Origin: Oikopleura dioica | Taxonomy: Eukaryota > Animalia > Chordata | DNA length: 64,000 bases | Direction of reading: 5' to 3' | Assembly (NCBI GenBank): GCA_907165135.1 | Contig: OU015568.1 | Location: 14,322,001 to 14,386,000, forward strand | In this document: piece by piece, positions 38,131 through 48,940 of the stretch | How positions within the stretch are numbered: the first letter of the stretch is position 1 | How the letters are laid out: every line of letters begins with the position of its first letter | Position numbers and translations under genes: made by a program | Notes under the pieces: generated by a model | The model's database searches: none | The model's input: the letters and a program-made list of their open reading frames with translations, nothing else | What the model was told of the DNA's origin: nothing

Positions 38131-40774
38131 CTAAATGTCAAGTTTCTGCGAGGACAAACGAGAGGGTAGCTTGGGAATGAAGTCGTTTCGATAATTGCGT
38201 AGCTCGATTTCTAACCAGTCGAATTTGTTTTTCCACTTTTTCGCCATCTCCGCGATACCGTCATAGGTTTGGGATTTTTCTTAAATCGATTTTAGAGCCG
38301 ATCATAATTTTTGATTTCAATACCTTCCAAGAGATTAATTTCATCCGTGAGATCGTTGGTGACTTCTTTGGCGGTCATTTCTAACCGAGTAAATGTCTCC
38401 TTCAGCTCAGATTCAACCTGATAAGATGTTAATAACAGTGTTAATAACTTTCTCTTATAAAAACCTGATTGGAACACTTCGAAGCGGTGTATTCAACAGA
38501 ATGGCGCAATTTCTCTGATGCATGATCAGCAAACTGCTTTCTAAACTCTTGTCCTTGTCTCGCAGGCGTCCATCGAATCCTTTCAAAAGCGTAGTATCCT
38601 GCATAAGCAAAGATTCCCCCGATTATTATTCGATTTCCAATAGTTGAGAGTCCAGATTTATTCCAGAATTTCCAAGCTGCTGTAGCAACAACACCAGAGG
38701 GAAGGAATCGCTCTGCAGTTTCGACATCTTGAGCTCGAATTGTTCCGTCTAATTTCAACTATGAAAGGGGAATTTTTGAATGGGGGCTTACTTGTGATGC
38801 TCTCTATCTGCGATGGCAAATTAGAACAGGCTCCGACAGTCATATTTTGAATGAAGGATAAGACACTGTAAGAAGTAACGGCTTTTCCGAGATAAGGAAC
38901 TTTTTCCAGAAGGCTTGATAATGATTTGATTAATGGGAAGAGCTAGAATTGTCTTACCGCGTGGGAGAAGCGGAGAACTTGAAGCTCAGGTCTTCTTTGA
39001 AATCATTCAGAGCAAAGAAATTGATCTCGTATTGCAGTGAAAATGGTCGGTTAGCTTCGGTTTTGCACTTTTCTTTATCCTGAAATACCGATAGAATGAG
39101 ATAATTTTCTTCCATTTACCTTGATGACATTTGTTAGTCCTTCGATCATTTCCATCTTTGCCCGACTGACTTCTTCAGTAAGAGATGCTGAACAAAGGGA
39201 GACGAGGTTTTGGCGTACTCCATTTTCGACATGTTCAATGAGCTTTTTTCGATAAGCGTCAATGACAAATTTTGAGGGGTGGAATTTTTCGAACTCGAAA
39301 TTTTCAACCAACTCAGAAACTTTTCCAAGCTCGATGTCTAGTGCCGCAGCTACTTGGTTTGATACATTGTCCTATCGAATCTTTTAGGTTAGATTGGAGT
39401 GACTTTACTTACTGTTATGTGGCTAATCTGGTCATGTACTTTCTTCGTGACTTTCTCCATTTGATCCTTGTTGAAGTTTTTCCTCATCTTTTGTGTATCC
39501 GCTTCGTCGTTAGAGATATTTCTTACGACAAGTGCGGCAGCATTCAAATCGGCCAGGATTTTTGACAAGTGTTTGACGATATTCTCTCCACCAGATACAT
39601 GCTGAGAAAACTTCGTTGCGATCGCTGAACGAGTGATGCACTCTTCAAACTTCTTCTCAAACTCTTCGAACTCGAGCTGACGACTTTTGAAGCCATCTGG
39701 GAAGTTGTTTGGGTTCTCCGGAATGCCTTAAAATCCATCGTTAATTATCTCAAGCGAATAGTCTTCTTACCTTTAGTCCTTGAGATTCTTGTATTGAGCA
39801 TTTCCCGAGCTGAGATAAAGAACACACGGTTTTGGGCTTCAGAGGAGTTGTAAATTTTCAACTCGTCGGTGAGAAAAGCTTCTGCTCGTTCAAGATGCTG
39901 AGCTCGAACTAATAAATATTAAGATTAATAAAAACGAAGAAAATCTAACCTTCATCCATCATATCAGGCTCCTGAGCAGAAGCATCCCATCGATTGTGCA
40001 AAATGAAGATATTCGGCTTTGAGAAGCACTCAGAAACTTTGTGGAAAAAGTTTTTCTCCGCCTGCATCATTGTCGATTCTGCATTCGCCACGAGAATGAA
40101 TACATCCGCGTCCAAGCAGTGCTTATCAATCCACAGGTCCAAATCGGGCGTCACATCCACGCCAGGGCTGTCTACAATGCACACTTCAGCGTTGAGAAGT
40201 CTACATTTGTTTTTCGGCCAGCAAATCTTGATCAAACTGTCTTCTGTCAATTTTTCCGCGGCGCCAGAAAGTGCATGAGCTAGCTTTTGAACTTTTTCTA
40301 CCGCCTGTTCTTCTCCATCTTCAGTAATGATATACGGATTGGGCTTTCCCGATCCCTCAACAGCCAGGAAGCAGGAAGTTGTGTGGCCGATCCCGGAAGG
40401 TAGAACTTTGTCCCATAACATGGCGTTGATGCATGTTGATTTTCCATTTGAGGTGCGCCCGAAGAAGGCAACCTTCATCTGATCTCGAGAAAGGATCTCG
40501 TGGACGCCTGTTACTTTGACGACAAGCTCATTGAGCTCTGCAATCGTGTCTGATGAAAGAACATGGTCGGTGTCAGTCGTAACCACTGTCTCAATGAATG
40601 TCTATAATGATGGCTAAAATTTGCTGAAATAATTTATAGAGACGTAAAAATTTGAGCCATTTCCTGTACTGCTTCTATTTGCTCTTTAATCTGCTCGAAG
40701 ACCTCCTGAATCTTCCGCTTGGCGTCGGAGAACTCCTCAAATACAGATTCCGTTCTTGGCATGACCGCACTCAT
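38131..40774 (-). CDS. MFN: Mitofusin (dynamin-like GTPase)
   Basis: KVAFFGRTSNGKSTCINAMLWDKVLPSGIGHTTSCF, DSPG.D, DADVFILVANAES, KPNIFILHNRWDASA, ERIRWT..EFRKQF, C-terminal KNKFDWLEIEL. Confidence 0.95.
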
Positions 40775-41163
40775 TTTCTCGTCGCTCCAATGTCTGAAAA
40801 AGCCATTCTGAATTCAAGCCGTCTGTTAGTCACTCAACCTCATCTCTGAACCCTCTTTGACCCTTACACAAACTAACACACAGTCATCACAAAAAAGAAA
40901 ACTCACGCAATGATTTAAATCAAGCGATATTTATTTGCAGGTATCAGCAAGATTGAAGGGGTTTAATAATTGGTCTATAAAGGTTGTCTTGTTTTGGGCA
41001 GTCAATTTATTTATCTAGAAATCTTTGTACAGTTGTGGTTTGTAGACCTTATTTTCCAATTGGACGTTTGTATTTTTTGCATTTTTGAACAAAGCGGAGT
41101 GGTAGTTTGAACTTATTACCAGCCTAGAAGTATTTATGATTAATTTCATTCATTAAAAGTTTT

Positions 41164-44100
41164 CTAACCGGTGTTTCCATCGGGTGATCGATTGCCCATC
41201 GTAGCGGCATCACTCCACGCGTCGGAATTCTTTTTCTTTGGGCTTTTGGTGCCCCATCCACCAGAGCTTCGAGCTGGACTCTTATTTCCCCAGCTACTTC
41301 CACCGCCATCTCGAGCGGGGCTCTTTCCACCCCATGCGTTTCCACCACCGCTGCTGCTCTTGTTGCCCCACGGGCTCGAAGGCGTTCTCGAGCCGCTCTT
41401 CGTTCCCCAGCCGCTGGAGTTCGACTGTGAATTTGGATTGCTACCCCAAGAGTGGTTTGGAGTTCGATCGCCCCGTGGAGTCATATCGCCGCGTGGAGTT
41501 TTACCGCCCCTTGGAGTGCGGCTTCCAGCCCAAGAACCTTCGTCAGCTCTTGGCGTTCTTGGGGCTCCCCAGCTGCTAGATCCTTCTCGTCGAGCATCAC
41601 CACCGGCCCATGGTGACTTACCACCGCCAGCAGCGTCCCTTGCAGCCCATGGTGATTTTCCACCGTCATCTCGGTCTCTACCACTTGTATCGCTGCCTCC
41701 CCATGGACTTCTCTCGGCTGATGGACCTCCTTTTCCGCCCCATGGTGATGGCTCTCTACTATACAAATTGTGAGATGCAGACAAAATGCACGATTCTTAC
41801 CTGTCTCTATCATTTGAACTATTCCAGGATGGCTGTCGATCATCTCTGCTGAAAGAAGAGCCACGATCTCCTCTGTCTCTTCCCCTATAGCTACCGCCAT
41901 CTCGATCTCGTCTATCTCCTCCGTCTCTTCGTCCACCAAAGTCGCCACGACCACGTCCTCGGCCGCGTCCACCGCCTCGGCCTCCGCGTCTATCTCCTCC
42001 ACGGTCCCATCCTCTGTCGCCACCTCTATCGCCGCCTCGGCCACCGCCCCAAGAATTTCTATCGTCTCTTCCTGGACGGTCACCACCGGATCTACCAGAT
42101 GATCTGCCCCAGCCGCCGTCATCATCATCGACTCTTCTAAGAAGAGAAGGCTTCTTGAATCCATCATCATCAACTCTTTGGAGTGTTGGTTTGCGCGGTG
42201 ATTCTTCGAATGGATCCGAAGGAGTGTAAGCACCACCTTTGAGCTCCTTGAGTTGTTGTCGATTGAGAGAATTCACGATTTCTGCCAGGCCTTGTTTTGG
42301 ATCGCGACGGACAGGAGCTGGAGGACGCTCGAGGTAATGCTCTTTGAAGTACTGGAAGAGAGTCGCTGTAGTTGAGTGAACAATTTGACGGTAGCGGAAT
42401 CCGTCTGGCAGTGCTGTTATGTATTCGTGCTTCACAGAGCTGTTCGATGAAGGGAGGAAGGAGAGCATAAATTTCCCTGAAAATAAAGTTTATCAAACAA
42501 TTGAAGAGAAATTAGATCACCTTCAACTTCGGCTGGGCCGCAAGTGTCCTTGCGGCAGCAGGAGATAAAGTAGGGAATCTTCTTCGCATCAGCTCTTTTA
42601 GCTTCCTTACAAAGAGCCTCTGCTTCCTTACGAGCACCCCCGATATCTCTGAAGTACTTGTGCTCGATCAAATCGCGTGCATTCGAAGCCATCGGCTGAA
42701 CGTATCGTGCGATAACCTCATCGAGATCTTCATACTCTTCGCCGTTGATGATGAGCTTTTCACCAAGTGTGTAGCTGTTGATTTTGTTTCTTTCGTGAAT
42801 CGTGATTTGCGAGTAAATGTTGTCGTGGACTTTCCAAGTGGCGCTGATGAAATCAGATCCTTTTGAACTTGGTCGGATGATGCACTCGCCTTGATCCATG
42901 GACTGCAGTCTGAGGATCGCATCGCCGTAGGAGATGTTCATGAAATTATCATGAGCAATGACGCGCTAGAAAACTTATGAAAATACCGAATTATTTCATA
43001 GGGTACCTTGGTGTATTGAGACTGATTTTGAGCCTTTTTCTTCTTATTCTGAAATTGAGCGAGGACCATGTCCATCTTGGTCTTATCCAGATGCCTGTCT
43101 TGCTCTTTGTGATTGGCTCCGAAATTATCGTTCTGTAGATCGGTACTCTTCGTAGTCAATCGCAACTGGAACTTTTCGAAGTTGATGGACTTGATGCGTC
43201 CTCGAACGACCTGATCGAGCTTCATTCTTGTCGTTGGATCCTCGACGTACCCATCGTCTCGACTGGAGATGCTATTTCTATCAACAAGGGCCGAAAGGCC
43301 GTTGTCGAGCTTGATGGAAACCGCCCAAAGTTCTCCTGGACACTTATCATCTAAATCATTGATTTAACAAGATGATCATTTTTAAAAATCCTACAATTGT
43401 CAAGGGTGTCAAAGTGAGTCCAGACTTGACTGAGTTCCGTGAAATCTTTTCGTTTGCACCAGGGGCACATCCAGCAGTCTGTTCCTTCCACTCGCTTGGG
43501 ATCTTTTAGATTTTCCTCGCTCATTTGTCCGTTTTCATCCTTCTTAGTCGCCGAGTACATGAACCTAAGATTTGATAAACATCATAAACACTTATTTGTG
43601 TACCTTTGAACGGTTCCAGTTACCATCTTTTGCGGATAAATAGTGTCCGCTGTTTCACCAGTAAGGAGATAGAAGAGCTCGTCAGAATGAATTTGTCTGG
43701 GAGGCTTGCGGTTGTCTCTAAATGGAGAACCGATCTCTTTTTTCAACTGATAGAGCGTGCAGATCTTGTTGAAGATGTTGAAATTGCCCTCATTGTGATT
43801 GAGTGTAATCAGATCAGCATTGAATGCTTCGAGATCCAGGCCTTGCAGGTACTCCGGCTTTCCCATGACCTAAGATTCGATGACAAACAGTTTTAACGTC
43901 ATAAATTACCTTGTTGACAGCTCGATACTCCTCATTTTCGTACTCGTCCTCCTCCATTTCATCTGGAGCGACTTGACAAGCCAAATCCTTGCACATTTTT
44001 CGTCCATATTCGAAACTTTCTGGATGAATACGAGTACTGTCGAAAACATCGACGTATTCTTCAGCGTCGCCGAGTTCGGAAGTGTTCAACCGGATGAAAC

Positions 44101-47100
44101 CGACACAATTGACGAAGACGGTTGGACCAATCGAACGGACTTGATCATCGTTGACGCCAAGGATCTTTTGTCGATGCTCGATTCGGATATTTTGGCGACG
44201 ATAATCCTTCAGGAAAGCATCGGCTTTTCTTCTTCCAAGACCTGTAAATATAAGAAGAGGTTCAGTCAATTGTAAATACCTGGTAAGAATTGAAGAAGTT
44301 GACTGTGATGATCAAGAGCGATAGCCTGATTAATGTCGACTCCGATGTCGCAAACTATTTTCTGCATTTCTTCCTCAAGTGCTTTGCGAAGGAGATCTTT
44401 AGTTCGACGATCTTTGAGAAGATACTGATTTGGCGAAAGATTGAGGCAAAGAATGTCATCATCTGGGTTGAAGAGCTGGGAGATTTCGATTGCAGGGTCA
44501 AGAGCAAATCGTCCTAGAAAAGCATTAGCTTTAGTGATAGAGAAATATTTTACCTAATGAAATGGCGAGACGAAGTTCTTCTGGATAATCAGGATAAGCT
44601 TCTTGGGCGAATTTGGCGACAGAGTAGACACGAGAGACCATTGGATCTCTGAATTCAACTACAGGCTTGGGATAGCCGTCTTCGATGTGGAGTTCCTCGA
44701 TTACTCGATTGACCATGGTCATAAGGTTTCGAGATTTCATCGAAGTGGCAGCCAAAATGATAGCGTAGGGTCGGTATCGAGAAAGAATCTGCTTCAGCTG
44801 GTCAATGTCGCGTTTCATCGACTGATGATGAGGGTGACTTTCTCTCATTGCAGGAGCCATGATTCGGTTAAATTTTCGATACATGTGGATTTCACCGTCT
44901 TGCTTGAGCATGACTCCAAAGGTTGGCACTTCAATTCGGTCACTGGCGTGGAGACAGAGAAGCAAATCTTCTTGCTCGTAGTCTTCATCTTCGAGGGGAT
45001 TATTGATCGGAATGCACGGACCGGCAGAGGCGATGGCACGGAACTTTCGCCGAGCAAACTCGTATATTCCTTCTTCTGCTTCTTCAATCAACTTGAGCTT
45101 GAGTTTTTGGATAAAGGCGGGATAGAGCATTTGATTGAGCATCTCCTGAATTAGCATCTGACGCTGCGTGTTCCACTTGACAGTGAGATCATCATTGAGA
45201 TCCTTGTTGTAAAGATCAAAGAGGTCTTCTTCGATGTCGTCAAGAATCATGCCATTTCCGTCTGGGTCAGTGAATCGGTGACTAGGTCGTTTTTCAAGGC
45301 CGATTTCCATCTCAATGAGCTTATCATCGGCTCCATTTTTCAAGTGAATAAATTCGGCGCCTTTTAGATCCTTTATGGGCTTGTTGCTCAAAAATCGAAG
45401 TCGATAAAGGGGGTGGTCCTCGTCAATAGCACGCTCGCCCTTTTTCGTCAGCGTGGTGGAAATGCATGCCTTTTCGAAGAATTGCTTTCGAACAACCTTT
45501 CGAACTTCGGGTTCAACAGCCATTTGCTGAGCGGCGACAAAACGGGCACCGCGGAGAACTTTCTCGGCGGAATCGAACTGATCTGTCACATACAATGATG
45601 CGAATTCCTCTGGCTGCTCGTCGCATTGATTGACTTCGTGGTTCTGGAAGTCGCATTTGACGTGATCAGCGAATTCTTCCGGTGTCAGACCGAATTTCTT
45701 AGCAACTTCGCCAAGGTTGTTTTTCAGGCATAAGTTGTAGTTCGAGTTTCGCTGGGCCTGCTTCATGTTCTTTGTGTCTCCAGAATTGTATTCTTCGTCC
45801 TCATTTCGATTTTTCTGATTCATTTTTTGGACATCCCGGCCAAAATGAAGCTGGAAGAACTGAAAGTAATCATCGAGTTCGTTTTGAGTGTTGCATTCTT
45901 CGACTTTACTGACGTATGAAGGCTCAAGGGATCGGTAAACTTTGAAGTCTTCAGATTGACTTTCGTCGTACTGGAAATTAAGCATGTTCTGGAAGAGCTT
46001 GTGGAGCTTGATCTTCTTTTGAGAGAATTTCATGTAGTGCTCATCATATCGAAGGATTCGGTGGAGATCGAAAAAGTCAAGACTTTGCTCAGTATCGATG
46101 TAGTTGAGTCGCGACTCGTTGACATTAGGCAAGTCGGTTTCGAAAATTTCATTCGGGAACTCGCACTCTGGAATTCGCTCTCGGTCATCTCCCTCTTCGC
46201 CTTTCTTCTCTTTTCGATACCAAAGGAGCTCGTCGAAGGTGATATCGGCATCACCAAGTTCGCGACGTTCCTTGTTCACTCTCTGAAGCTCCTCTTCGTT
46301 TAGAAACTGAGTTCTGCCTTCATGATCACCGATTTTCATTTTGCGGTTGATACGACCAAGACGCGGCCCATTCATGCTCATTGAAGTATCCATAGGTTGG
46401 CCCGTGCTACCGGCGCCGCCCCAGCTGCTGCTTGCTGTGTTTGCCCATGGGCTCTCACCAATATTTTCCTTGTTTGACTCGGAAGCAGTCCATGGAGATG
46501 CAGATGACTTTTCTGAGGTATCATTATTTTCCCAACCAGAGTTTGGTTTGTCAGCATCATTAGATGTGTTGCCCCAACCGCCACCGACGGGACTCGCGGG
46601 TGCGTCGCCCCATCCGCCGGGTTTTCGAGCCATCTCGGGGTTACCCCAATCGCCATCACCGGTGCTACTACCCCAGCCGTCATTGCCAGCCATAGAGCCA
46701 TTTTCTCTTGGAAAATCACTTTCTCGTTCGCTCATGAAATCTTTAAGTGGCACACCGAATTCATCCTTGATGTATTTTCCGATCAGATCCCAGTGGAGAA
46801 TTTGCTCTTGCCTATATTTGTAAATAAACGCCGGTTCAAGTACAGTAAGACCGTTTGAAATGCCTTCTCCGACTCGGAAGTTGTAAAGCGCCTTGTAAAT
46901 CTTGAAGAGGAATGTGTTGTGTTTTCTGCCGTATTCCATGATGTACTTTAGTCTTTGTTCGCGGTCTTCGTGATTTCGCAACGGCTCATAGTCTTTGTAT
47001 TTCAAAAACACTTTAGCAGCGTCGTCGATTCTCTTCTTGGGATAAGGGCTTGCATAAACAGTCGGCATCTTTTCTGGCTCTGGTTCAGGCTCTTCACCCT

Positions 47101-48940
47101 CTCTTGGCCTCTTCTTGAATTCAGGCAATTGCTTGACTTCCTGGCGAAACATTGGATCTTCAAATTCTTGATTGGAAATGGAAGAGTTGAAAGCGTTCTC
47201 CAAGATCCATCGAGCTTCCAGCTCAAGTTCGTTCTCGATCGCATCTGCGTCTGTTTGAACGTCTGAAATCTCGATATACTTGACCGGGCATTGACCATCT
47301 CCTCGAGTTTGAAAGCGCTCAGGACGATCTTCGTCGATGATCGCGGTGGCTTCGTCATTGTAGCCTCGTCGCTCAAGTTCGTCCGGTTCATAAAGATCTG
47401 TAAGCGCTTTCTTCGATTTCTTCTGCTTCACAGGCCGCGGCTCGTCTTCGTCGTATTCTCCATATTCGTTTTCGAAATCTTCAAACATTTCCCCAAGCTG
47501 AGTCGGATCAATGTCGAAGATATTCGCTGCTTCGCGAAGATTCTCGTCGACGTAAACATTTCCGCCTTTGGACTTCTTGTTCGTATAAATAGGATTGCCC
47601 TGATCATCGACGATGAAGTTGTTCTCGTCGTCGGAACCGGAGTCAGAGTCAAAGTTGTCCTTTTCTCGTCGAGCACGGCGCGGTTCCATAGGCTGGTCGT
47701 CATCGGAGCCGAGTGTTTCGTCGAAAATGTCACGCTGGATTCGATCTCGATCGTCTAGATCTTCATTCGCGTCTTCTTCATCGTCGGAGTCCATCACAAC
47801 TCGGTTGAGCTTTTGACGCCTAGGGATGAAAAGTTACAACTTTGTGAAAAAATTTTCTCTATTTACCTGTTGACATTGATGCCCAAGTTCTCATTGATCA
47901 AATCAAAATCGTCATCGTCGAGCTTGTCATCTCGCAGCGCATCATCGCCATCTCTTCGCTTCTTTTTCTTCTTTTTTCGACGTCTCTCGCCAGAAGCTTC
48001 TTCCTCGACCTCTCCGTCGTCGATCAGATCCTCGAGATCTCCATCTTCTTCCGAATCGTCCTCGTCATCGTCAGAGTCCTCGAGAACTTTCATCTTCTTA
48101 TATTTCTTCGACTTTTTGGGGTTTCTCAAAAGCTCCTCATCTTCATTCTCACTTTCTTCCGCCATTTTGTCTTCAAAATCAGCCGGATTCCACTTTTTCT
48201 TTTTCTTCGGTTTCTCGTCGGCGGAATCGTCGCTATCTCCGTCATCGCTGTCTGCTGGTCGTTTATGACCCTTTCGAGAGTTTCAATTAAGTAAAAGGGG
48301 AATTCATTAGTTGAGAAAACTACGAAAATTTCAAAGAATAATGAGTTGAGAAAAACTCTTTCCTTTGGATTCTCATCATCGGAGCCGGACATTGCATCAT
48401 CCGACTGCTCTTTCGTGGACTTTTCTCCGTCAGAATCATCAGAAGCCGAATCAGCTTGTCTTGGTTTTCGACTCACTGGCTCGTCGTCACTGTCATCAGA
48501 CGAATCGAGGTTATTGCGCGCTCGGGGTGCTTCATCCTCGTCGCTAGAAAATAGAATTTCGGTTTCCGAACAGCTGCAAACAAGTTCTTCGATAATGTAA
48601 ATAGCAAACAAAGAAGTTGAAAAAGGTTCTCGTTCCAACTTTATAAAAGCTGATAAGTGACAATGTAAGTACACCCAGCAAATAAAGTCCTTCAGTATAA
48701 TTCTTCGACTCGAAAACACGAAGCTTGAAAGGCAAAAATGAAAGAAATTTAAAACTAGCATAAGTTTTCGACTCGAAAACACTAAATTCGATTAAAAACG
48801 CTATCAACTCTCGTCTACCTCGATGCAGAGTCGTTGATCCTGGCTTGAGGTCGTCCCGTATCCTGATCCGAATCTGAAGCGGAATCCTCCGCCTGAAGGT
48901 TCCGTCGTGGCTCATCATCTGACTCGTCCGAGGAGCTCAT
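41164..48940 (-). CDS. SUPT6H: Transcription elongation factor/histone chaperone SPT6 with WG/GW-rich additions
   Basis: Acidic N-terminus with DDDDFDLINENLG; HtH, YqgF and HhH core (DSTRIHPE); S1; tandem SH2 (QGECIIRPSSKG..TWKV, KKIPYF); long Gly/Trp-rich tail. Confidence 0.95.

What the first reader, a model, noticed from the sequence alone, without database searches (positions are those of the whole stretch)
41164..42200. Animal SPT6 with a C-terminal WG/GW (Argonaute-hook-like), RGG and S/T-P repeat tail
Seen: after the tandem SH2 comes a tail of about 330 aa with 17 Trp, 12 of them next to Gly (GWG, SWG, SPWGG, NAWGG and similar), an RGG/RG block (GGRGGGRGRGRGRG) and many CDK-type sites (RTPR, KTPR, MTPR, KSPAR, KSPKK). 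Known: WG/GW repeats bind Argonaute (GW182, plant NRPE1, SPT5L/KTF1 and plant SPT6L), and the canonical yeast and human SPT6 proteins lack such a tail. Inference: convergent recruitment of an AGO/PIWI-binding, phospho-regulated platform onto Pol II elongation machinery, possibly for co-transcriptional TE silencing in a TE-rich genome.
Basis: partly seen in the sequence, partly recalled or inferred. Interest (0 to 1): 0.75.

Follow-up and report, generated by a model that had tools for sequence, protein, structure and literature searches.

The report
Trp-repeat tail on tunicate SPT6
The transcription elongation factor SPT6 of the tunicate Oikopleura dioica ends in an expressed, conserved, disordered tail of evenly spaced tryptophan-glycine motifs that looks like the Argonaute-binding 'hook' of plant SPT6L, so far unreported in any named animal; whether it binds an Argonaute is untested.

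Summary
The minus-strand SPT6 gene (window 48940 to 41116) is 100% identical in its exons to Oikopleura dioica CAG5090253.1. It continues past the tandem SH2 into a tail of about 371 residues.

- **Transcribed.** Spliced poly-A metatranscriptome contigs show the tail in mRNA. They also reveal a 45-nt terminal intron, so the protein ends ...NTGW. That makes 18 Trp.
- **Not chance.** 10 of 12 Trp gaps in the last large exon are 12-14 residues. 122 non-plant SPT6 tails have at most 5 Trp.
- **Under selection.** dN/dS is about 0.07-0.2 across three O. dioica lineages, and the tail is predicted disordered.
- **Plant-like.** Composition scores fall in the range of plant SPT6L hooks.

An Argonaute-hook function is the best reading (about 0.4) but is unproven. 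Three points count against details of it:
- O. dioica is TE-poor, not TE-rich.
- PIWI-clade Trp pockets are poorly conserved.
- Trp-rich, RGG-containing SPT6 tails also occur in Amoebozoa, in several unnamed protists, and in an unnamed metazoan or choanoflagellate clade.

The scan also noted the second, internal GW cluster of this gene.

The parts
41116..48940 (-). SPT6 gene of Oikopleura dioica, from the start codon to the RNA-supported stop codon
   Evidence: A tblastn of the public model P0298 (CAG5090253.1) on the window is 100% identical in most exon-level matches and 92-99.5% in the others. The best hits are ascidian SPT6.
42319..42476 (-). C-terminal part of the tandem SH2, in the same exon as the first part of the tail
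   Evidence: Pfam SH2_2 positions 168-211, E 3.7e-6. Human SPT6 residues 1482-1520 match in PDB chains. The upstream 44-nt intron is 42477-42520.
42118..42318 (-). Conserved linker after the SH2 (APVRRD...LLRRVDDDD), with no Trp
   Evidence: It is almost invariant in three lineages. With the SH2 end, dN is 0.004-0.02 at dS 0.35-1.3.
41815..42117 (-). First Trp/RG-rich part of the tail, with 4 Trp (GWG, SWG, GWD, SWN) in an Arg/Gly/Asp-rich stretch
   Evidence: The Trp number (4) is kept in sibling lineages through turnover of positions.
41944..41985 (-). RGG/RG block GGRGGGRGRGRGRG
   Evidence: It is invariant in L002 and L003 apart from a one-residue gap in L002.
41759..41800 (-). 42-nt GT..AG intron inside the tail
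   Evidence: Sequence. It is removed in a poly-A metatranscriptome contig (X2 record 11). An intron sits at the same position in L002 (45 nt) and L003 (43 nt).
41169..41758 (-). Main Trp array: 13 Trp at a period of about 13 residues, 15 S/T-P sites, units of the type KSPW[AG] and SWGxKSPAR
   Evidence: Ten of 13 Trp are invariant in three lineages and dN/dS is 0.10-0.16. AlphaFold2 gives mean pLDDT 45 and no secondary structure.
41458..41517 (-). 18-nt tandem repeat that encodes the TPRGD/TPRGG repeats
   Evidence: Tandem Repeats Finder: period 18, 3.3 copies.
41124..41168 (-).
   Evidence: It is removed in an oligo-dT metatranscriptome contig (X1 record 1). A second contig (X2 record 9) has loose letters that match the downstream exon. 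GT..AG and the downstream GCTGGTAA are kept in L002 and L003 although the intron sequence differs.
41116..41123 (-). Last coding letters: G|GC TGG TAA, which read Gly-Trp-stop
46358..46732 (-). Second, internal Trp cluster in the large SPT6 exon: 8 Trp, 6 beside Gly, gaps of 8-15 residues
   Evidence: In sibling lineages it is expanded to 15 GW motifs at a period of 12 (P0001) and to tandem SGWDKEAPAAS units (L002:2-430).

Best explanation
The tail is a lineage-specific, intrinsically disordered, multivalent tryptophan platform added to the C-terminus of Oikopleura dioica SPT6. A second, smaller platform sits inside the core of the same protein.

Shown here:
- The tail is translated in frame with the tandem SH2.
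- It is present in spliced mRNA.
- It is kept under purifying selection.
- It has no predicted fold.
- It carries 18 Trp, mostly as [S/G/P]-W-G, about 13 residues apart.
- It also carries an RGG block and many S/T-P sites.

Inferred: each exposed Trp acts as a ligand for a hydrophobic Trp pocket, as in the WG/GW Argonaute hooks of plant SPT6L, NRPE1 and SPT5L and of animal GW182. The tandem SH2 holds SPT6 on the phosphorylated Rpb1 linker. The tail would then tether one or more guide-loaded AGO-clade Argonautes next to the nascent transcript of elongating Pol II. Phosphorylation of Ser/Thr-Pro sites could switch the Trp motifs on or off. These sites lie directly before Trp (SPW) or four residues after it (WGxKSP). 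The RGG block could add RNA binding or methyl-arginine docking.
For: - Trp count and context.
- Regular 12-14 residue spacing, essentially never reached by random placement. The literature describes three evenly spaced Trp pockets in the human AGO2 PIWI domain (PMC12477606).
- A home-made composition score of the Karlowski type, trained on plant SPT6L hooks. It gives 142 and 200 for the two tail exons. Plants score 228-499. The 122 non-plant tails have a maximum of 81 and a median of 26.
- Low content of C, F, H, M, Y, I, L and V: 1.5% in the main array. This fits the published hook composition (PMC2910046).
- Predicted disorder.
- Spliced RNA.
- dN/dS of 0.07-0.2 at dS up to more than 1.3.
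- The Trp number is maintained through turnover in the first tail part.
- An independent second GW array in the same protein behaves like a classical hook in sibling lineages. Its repeats expand and only GW is kept.
- The terminal Gly-Trp is encoded across a conserved tiny intron.
- The Arabidopsis SPT6L hook is reported to bind AGO4 and AGO9 (bioRxiv 10.64898/2026.03.25.714125).
- O. dioica is reported to have several Ago-subfamily proteins and one Piwi (PMC4402516).
Against: - No binding data exist, and the O. dioica Argonaute pockets could not be inspected here.
- In the tail, flanking residues are as conserved as Trp: 12 of 17 Trp columns are invariant against 188 of 289 other columns. The selected unit is therefore larger than W(G), unlike classical hooks.
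- Arg, Lys and Pro are much more abundant than in plant hooks.
- Only 13 of 18 Trp are beside Gly.
- Trp motifs in disordered regions also bind other partners, such as the CNOT9 pockets (PMC4615383, reference list).
- Trp-rich, RGG-containing SPT6 tails recur in many eukaryotes, often as acidic [DEN]-W-[DN] motifs. An older partner that is not an Argonaute is therefore possible.
- The composition score was built here from six plant sequences and is not the published predictor.
Confidence: 0.4

Rival explanations
1. The tail is a generic multivalent disordered region. Trp and Arg act as sticker residues, and the RGG/RG and SPKK-like S/T-P-basic motifs bind nascent RNA or DNA. It concentrates SPT6 in Pol II condensates or helps nucleosome reassembly, with no specific Argonaute partner. 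CDK-type phosphorylation tunes it.
For: - An RGG block and a net basic charge with many KSPxR, SPKK and TPR motifs.
- All 22 Trp-rich SPT6 tails in the survey also carry RGG-type triplets.
- Ascidian SPT6 tails already carry TPR/TPK repeats without Trp arrays.
- Predicted disorder.
- Flanking residues are as conserved as Trp.
Against: - Sticker-type regions rarely keep so strict a 12-14 residue Trp spacing.
- Trp is an unusual choice of aromatic sticker.
- The internal array in sibling lineages keeps only GW while everything else changes. This points to Trp as a specific ligand.
Confidence: 0.3
2. The Trp motifs are short linear motifs for a Trp-pocket partner other than an Argonaute. Candidates are CCR4-NOT (CNOT9), PAN3, or an unknown ancestral partner of the SPT6 C-terminus. 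O. dioica has multiplied a motif that most animals keep in one to three copies.
For: - Canonical animal tails keep about 3 Trp, including a conserved D-W-G...A..W motif.
- A C-terminal Trp is widespread: bees end ...DENW, an ichthyosporean ...NWD, a chytrid ...GQW, plants and Pelomyxa ...GGGW.
- The O. dioica end G-N-R-S-P-D-G-N-T-G-W has the same G-x-x-[ST]-P-x5-W layout as bee G-D-A-T-P-L-Y-D-E-N-W. This comparison was made by eye.
- An unnamed clade with the S1 zinc-finger insert has 5-11 acidic Trp motifs plus RGG.
- GW182 Trp motifs are known to bind CNOT9 pockets (cited in PMC4615383).
Against: - The O. dioica motifs are Gly/Ser-flanked and basic. They are not acidic like the widespread [DEN]-W-[DN][DE] type.
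- No partner of the metazoan SPT6 C-terminal region is known to me.
- Composition matches plant hooks much better than it matches other animal tails.
Confidence: 0.2
3. The tail is a functionally neutral low-complexity expansion, produced by replication slippage in a GC-rich terminal exon and tolerated at the end of an essential protein.
For: - The region is of low complexity, with open frames on several strands and frames and short tandem DNA repeats.
- The internal array changes copy number between lineages.
Against: - dN/dS is 0.07-0.2 with saturated synonymous divergence.
- Ten of 13 Trp and whole repeat units are invariant across three lineages.
- The terminal Gly-Trp is conserved behind a diverged intron.
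- The Trp period is regular.
Confidence: 0.05

Closest known systems
Plant SPT6L (Arabidopsis At1g65440, also called GTB1) C-terminal AGO-hook
   Same: - Same host protein, and the same position directly after the tandem SH2.
- Disordered and rich in Gly, Ser and Trp, at 4-7% Trp.
- 10-20 Trp, mostly as WG or GW.
- RGG-type triplets are present.
- The protein ends in Gly-Trp.
   Different: - Independent origin. O. dioica SPT6 has the metazoan S1 zinc-finger insert and falls within the clade of SPT6 proteins that carry it, and ascidian and vertebrate SPT6 lack the hook.
- Much more Arg, Lys and Pro, with S/T-P sites beside nearly every Trp.
- A stricter period of about 13 residues.
- Flanking residues are conserved.
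- O. dioica has no Pol V and lacks DNMT1 and DNMT3 (PMC5240408).
- AGO binding is shown for the plant protein only.
Physarum polycephalum SPT6 WG/GW domain (PMC9864664), and the Pelomyxa schiedti SPT6 tail found here (P0290)
   Same: These are non-plant SPT6 proteins with WG/GW repeats after the SH2. Pelomyxa has 13 Trp (9 beside Gly), an RGG block and a C-terminal GGGW.
   Different: They are Amoebozoa, not animals. Pelomyxa also carries CCHC zinc knuckles in the tail. Function is untested in both.
GW182/TNRC6 Argonaute-binding domain
   Same: It is an animal disordered region with many Gly/Ser-flanked Trp that insert into pockets of the AGO PIWI domain. Multivalency and spacing matter for binding (PMC12477606).
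   Different: - GW182 is a cytoplasmic scaffold with a silencing domain, and none of its domains are present here.
- Pfam finds nothing in the main Trp array.
- The host protein and cell compartment differ, and there is no sequence homology.
NRPE1 and SPT5L/KTF1 hooks of the plant Pol V machinery
   Same: They have the same logic: an Argonaute hook attached to the transcribing polymerase or to its elongation factor. SPT5L, like the internal array of O. dioica sibling lineages, has many near-identical tandem units (PMC2910046).
   Different: They are plant-specific paralogues dedicated to Pol V and DNA methylation. In O. dioica the single essential Pol II factor carries the arrays.

Membership tests
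SPT6 (Tex-like Pol II elongation factor and histone chaperone) | Core domains in order (HtH, YqgF, HhH, S1) followed by a tandem SH2 | tested here: met
   Pfam finds HTH_44, Tex_central_region, YqgF, HHH_7, HHH_9 and SH2_2 on successive exons. Full-length ascidian SPT6 proteins are the best hits.
SPT6 (metazoan type) | C2HC zinc-finger insert in the S1 domain (SID), reported as metazoan and choanoflagellate (PMC13289920) | tested here: met
   The motif CWMCPWCKRKDF...WTHFD...C is present in the O. dioica protein and in Hydra. It is absent from plant, Pelomyxa, chytrid and ichthyosporean SPT6.
WG/GW Argonaute hook | Reiterated WG/GW motifs in an intrinsically disordered region | tested here: met
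   18 Trp, 13 of them beside Gly. AlphaFold2 gives pLDDT 45 and no secondary structure.
WG/GW Argonaute hook | Biased composition: rich in Gly, Ser and Trp (plus Asp, Glu, Asn) and poor in Cys, Phe, His, Met and Tyr (PMC2910046) | tested here: met
   The main array has G 21%, S 18%, W 7% and only 1.5% C/F/H/M/Y/I/L/V. The home-made score falls in the plant range. Caveats: there is an excess of Arg, Lys and Pro, and the published predictor was not available.
WG/GW Argonaute hook | Only W(G) is conserved between relatives, while the flanks drift | tested here: inconclusive
   In the tail the flanks are as conserved as Trp (12 of 17 against 188 of 289 invariant columns). In the internal array only GW is kept and copy number changes. 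Only three closely related lineages were available.
WG/GW Argonaute hook | Trp-dependent binding to the PIWI-domain pockets of an Argonaute | not testable with these tools
   This needs pull-downs with Trp-to-Ala mutants or a complex structure.
WG/GW Argonaute hook | A cognate Argonaute with intact Trp pockets in the same organism | not tested
   The literature reports several Ago-subfamily proteins and one Piwi in O. dioica (PMC4402516), and says the pockets are conserved in metazoan AGO-clade proteins in general (PMC12477606).
Plant SPT6L lineage (Streptophyta) | Common descent of the hook with the streptophyte SPT6L hook | tested here: not met
   O. dioica SPT6 falls in the clade of SID-bearing SPT6 proteins, apart from plants. 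Its closest named relatives, four ascidians and the vertebrates, have 1-5 Trp and no RGG block.
GW182/TNRC6 | Argonaute-binding domain together with a silencing domain (UBA, PAM2, RRM) | tested here: not met
   Pfam finds no domain in the tail beyond the end of the SH2. The host protein is SPT6.

The most novel reading that the evidence does not exclude
A chordate has independently rebuilt the plant solution. Its only SPT6 carries two Argonaute hooks. These tether guide-loaded AGO-clade proteins to elongating Pol II for co-transcriptional, small-RNA-guided surveillance of nascent RNA, in a genome that has lost DNMT1 and DNMT3 and most TE families.

A broader version is that a Trp-motif, RGG and C-terminal-Trp module is an ancient, recurrently expanded part of eukaryotic SPT6 tails, and the plant AGO hook is only its best-known form.
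Probability: 0.2. Interest if true: 0.85.

Novelty: new variant of a known kind. Interest (0 to 1): 0.62.

Why it matters
The literature treats SPT6 with an Argonaute hook as a plant trait. PMC10991848 states that animals have only the canonical SPT6 without a hook.

A conserved, expressed, plant-like Trp platform on the single SPT6 of a chordate gives a concrete and cheap hypothesis: peptide pull-downs with Trp-to-Ala controls could test whether an animal couples Argonautes directly to elongating Pol II.

It would also offer a natural case of convergent evolution of this coupling. The host genome is ultra-compact, TE-poor and lacks DNMT1 and DNMT3, and H3K36me3 has been seen together with H3K9me3 on its transposons (PMC5240408).

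The side survey suggests that Trp-rich, RGG-containing tails that end in Trp are much more widespread among eukaryotic SPT6 proteins than published. If so, the origin of the plant hook would need to be reconsidered.

If the tail does not bind an Argonaute, it is still a clear example of a periodic, phosphorylatable Trp motif array whose partner is unknown.

Tried and rejected
- **PDB sequence search with the main Trp array:** no hit even at E 10.
- **ESM Atlas feature search with the same exon:** no usable hit.
- **Pfam on the main array:** nothing.
- **Raw RNA-seq reads of the same species label (X15, X16):** they come from a divergent lineage (90-95% alike, mostly partial fits), so they gave no clean coverage or junctions. 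The metatranscriptome contigs carried the RNA evidence instead. The 211-fold depth in one bin over the RGG-coding stretch reflects low-complexity matches and was ignored.
- **Search for other larvacean species:**
  - The SH2 exon found only the O. dioica complex (93%) and then proteins of about 54% identity.
  - One of these, L004, is another animal with a canonical tail.
  - The other, L005, reads like mammalian or human SUPT6H without introns. I took it for human and dropped it.
- **Test for Trp being more conserved than its neighbours:** not significant.
- **Tandem Repeats Finder:** it did not detect the 39-nt period of the Trp array at the DNA level, only the 18-nt TPRGD and 12-nt RGG repeats. 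The array is therefore old, not a recent amplification.
- **Identity of the Trp-rich unnamed SPT6 proteins:** they could not be named from cluster look-ups.
- **Rejected readings:**
  - A separate gene for the tail, because the tail shares an exon with the SH2 end.
  - A wrong reading frame, because of splicing, dN/dS and the conserved terminal GCTGGTAA.
  - A TE-rich genome context, from the literature.
- Exons were searched separately by reference. The public protein P0298 stood in for the whole protein in the trees.
Full report
**What is there.** The finding lies on the minus strand in the last exons of an SPT6 gene that runs from window 48940 to 41116.
- Pfam finds HTH_44, Tex central region and YqgF on the 1088-aa exon. 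It finds HHH_7 and HHH_9 on the next exon and SH2_2 on two further exons.
- The exon at 41801-42476 holds the last 44 positions of the SH2_2 model. It aligns with human SPT6 residues 1482-1520 in PDB chains. The tail is therefore in the same exon as the end of the tandem SH2 and cannot be a separate gene.
- The string GGRGGGRGRGRGRG is present. So are RTPR, KTPR, MTPR, KSPAR and KSPKK, among 15 S/T-P sites in the second exon.

**Organism.**
- The window's exons are 100% identical in most exon-level matches to NCBI CAG5090253.1 of Oikopleura dioica, assembly OKI2018_I69.
- The 42-47 nt introns fit the published intron peak of 47 bp for this species (PMC5240408).
- That public model is 3007 aa long because it fuses SPT6 (residues 1-2304) to the downstream mitofusin-like GTPase.

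**Corrected gene end and RNA evidence.** The tail starts at 42318, after ...HYLERPP.
- A 42-nt GT..AG intron (41759-41800) interrupts it.
- Contigs of two marine poly-A or oligo-dT metatranscriptomes from different studies cover the tail at 95-100% identity.
- One contig (X2 record 11) spans the junction of the two tail exons with the intron removed.
- Another (X1 record 1) shows that a further 45-nt intron (41124-41168) is removed. A second contig (X2 record 9) carries loose letters that match the downstream exon.
After splicing the protein ends ...N-T-G-W, with TAA at 41116-41118.
- The donor, the acceptor and the letters GCTGGTAA are kept in two sibling-lineage contigs although the intron sequence differs.
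- The tail is therefore about 371 aa long with 18 Trp, 13 of them beside Gly.
- The raw-read runs carrying the same species label belong to a divergent lineage and added little.

**More than chance.**
- Trp is 4.9% of the tail, against 0.41% in the rest of the large exon.
- In the second tail exon the gaps between successive Trp are 13, 18, 13, 13, 13, 28, 13, 13, 12, 14, 12 and 13 residues. Ten of 12 gaps in the 12-14 class were reached by 0 of 200,000 random placements. Allowing any three-wide class, 1 of 200,000 reached it.
- The repeat units read [KR]SPW[GA]G... and SWG[GNT]KSPAR... Almost every Trp thus has a Ser-Pro directly before it or four residues after it.

**Selection and disorder.** A scan of JGI metagenomes with the SH2 exon gave two contigs, L002 and L003. 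They are 93-94% identical in the SH2 and have the same downstream gene.
- Both carry the whole tail with introns at the same positions.
- Against the window, synonymous divergence is saturated (dS above 1.3) while dN in the tail is 0.19-0.30.
- In the unsaturated pair L002 against L003, dN/dS is about 0.07-0.16.
- Ten of 13 Trp in the main array are invariant. In the first tail part the positions turn over but the number stays at 4.
- Trp is not more conserved than its neighbours: 12 of 17 Trp columns are invariant against 188 of 289 other columns.
- AlphaFold2 on the three-lineage alignment gives mean pLDDT 45 and no secondary structure. This fits the 1.5% bulky or hydrophobic residue content.

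**Other animals.** Two word searches returned full-length SPT6 proteins.
- They cover four ascidians, many vertebrates including human, arthropods, molluscs, an annelid, a brachiopod, an echinoderm, a hemichordate, cnidarians and nematodes.
- Among 122 non-plant tails of at least 100 aa the maximum is 5 Trp, the median is 3, and at most 2 are beside Gly.
- Ascidian tails share TPR/TPK repeats and a short helix-like motif with O. dioica, and a D-W-G...A..W motif with vertebrates. They have no RGG block and no Trp array.
- The O. dioica tail therefore looks like the ordinary tunicate tail into which Trp units and an RGG block were added.

**Plant hooks.** Six plant SPT6L proteins from the same search have 10-20 Trp after the SH2, nearly all as WG or GW.
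- I built a composition table in the manner of Karlowski et al. (PMC2910046) from five of these six plant hooks.
- The best-scoring segments are 142 and 200 for the two O. dioica tail exons and 91 for the internal cluster.
- Plants score 228-499. The 122 non-plant tails have a maximum of 81 and a median of 26.
- This is my own approximation, not the published predictor.

**A second array.** The large exon holds an internal cluster of 8 Trp at about 46358-46732. The scan had noted it separately.
- In a sibling lineage (P0001, locus L001) it is expanded to 15 Trp, all beside Gly, at a period of 12.
- In L002 it consists of near-identical tandem SGWDKEAPAAS units.
- This array behaves like a classical hook: only GW is kept while copy number and flanks change.

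**Wider survey.** An exhaustive search with the SH2 exon returned 150 representatives.
- Some have Trp-rich tails. Pelomyxa schiedti has 13 Trp (9 beside Gly), an RGG block and ends GGGW.
- Several are unnamed protists, including one with 23 Trp.
- An unnamed clade has 5-11 acidic [DEN]-W-[DN][DE] motifs plus RGG and ends ...WD.
- That clade carries the S1 zinc-finger insert reported as metazoan and choanoflagellate (PMC13289920). In a core tree it sits beside the named animals. That tree used the quick method, and O. dioica is a long branch in it.
- All 22 tails with at least 6 Trp contain RGG-type triplets, and 15 of them end in Trp.
- A C-terminal Trp also occurs in bees (...DENW), an ichthyosporean and a chytrid.
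- A WG/GW domain in Physarum SPT6 is published (PMC9864664).
- Trp motifs are therefore a recurrent, perhaps ancient, feature of SPT6 tails. The O. dioica terminal Trp may be ancestral, while the array itself is new within chordates.

**Mechanism.** The best-supported reading is a multivalent Trp-ligand platform of the Argonaute-hook type, held at elongating Pol II by the SH2 domains of SPT6.
- Shown: frame, expression, selection, disorder, composition and periodicity.
- Inferred: the partner.
- The literature reports AGO4 and AGO9 binding by the Arabidopsis SPT6L hook (bioRxiv 10.64898/2026.03.25.714125).
- It reports three evenly spaced Trp pockets that are fully conserved only in metazoan AGO-clade proteins (PMC12477606).
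- It reports several Ago-subfamily proteins and one Piwi in O. dioica (PMC4402516).
- An AGO-clade partner is therefore more likely than Piwi.
- The S/T-P sites beside each Trp make a phospho-switch plausible, but this is inference only.

**Rivals.** There are three:
- a sticker or RNA-binding disordered region;
- a Trp-pocket partner other than an Argonaute, including an unknown ancestral partner of the SPT6 C-terminus;
- neutral low-complexity growth, which dN/dS disfavours.

O. dioica is not TE-rich. Its TE density is low and DNMT1 and DNMT3 are absent (PMC5240408; PMC4402516).

**Limits.**
- Only three closely related lineages carry comparable tails, and no other larvacean was found in the collections.
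- One contig fetched on the way (L005) reads like mammalian or human SUPT6H and was set aside unused.
- The spliced tail was never submitted as one joined protein. Exons were searched by reference.

Noticed in passing
window 38134-48940 (-): The public O. dioica protein CAG5090253.1 (3007 aa) fuses SPT6 (residues 1-2304) to the downstream mitofusin-like GTPase by skipping the true end of SPT6. RNA contigs instead support a 45-nt terminal intron and the ending ...NTGW followed by a stop.
   Followed up: yes
window 41755-41760 (-): There is a tandem acceptor (TATAG|TAG) at the junction of the two tail exons. The public model uses the downstream AG (reading ...DRDREPS...). The metatranscriptome contig uses the upstream one (...DRDSREPS...), with a synonymous difference at the first exon base.
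   Followed up: partly
window 46358-46732 (-); L001/P0001 residues 355-590; L002:2-430: A second, internal GW cluster sits in the SPT6 core with 8 Trp. Sibling lineages have expanded it to 15 GW motifs at a period of 12, and to near-identical SGWDKEAPAAS tandem units.
   Followed up: partly
proteins P0290, P0294, P0211, P0209, P0199, P0202, P0234: Trp-rich SPT6 tails with RGG blocks occur in Pelomyxa schiedti and several unnamed eukaryotes. All 22 tails with at least 6 Trp have RGG-type triplets and 15 of them end in Trp. This is wider than the published view that the hook is confined to streptophytes (plus Physarum).
   Followed up: partly
proteins P0311, P0170, P0206, P0155, P0162, P0173: An unnamed environmental clade has SPT6 with the metazoan and choanoflagellate S1 zinc-finger insert. 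Its tails carry 5-11 acidic [DEN]-W-[DN][DE] motifs and RGG blocks and end ...WD. The organism was not identified.
   Followed up: partly
proteins P0040, P0064, P0065, P0071, P0166, P0025: A C-terminal Trp is found in bee SPT6 (...GDATPLYDENW), an ichthyosporean (...NWD) and a chytrid (...GQW). Human SPT6 ends ...DEMDR. The O. dioica end has the same G-x-x-[ST]-P-x5-W layout as the bee end, so the terminal Trp may be ancestral.
   Followed up: no
L005 (ENA contig k141_929780): This intron-less, frameshifted SPT6 SH2-plus-tail stretch reads almost like mammalian or human SUPT6H inside a metagenome assembly. I took it for human or mammalian and did not save, compare or search it further.
   Followed up: no
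window 43351-43560 (-): [quoted passage not shown] It is retained in this fast-evolving tunicate.
   Followed up: partly
window 41943-42069: One metatranscriptome run shows a summed contig depth of 211 over the RGG-coding stretch only. This is most likely low-complexity GC-rich contigs of other organisms, not expression.
   Followed up: no
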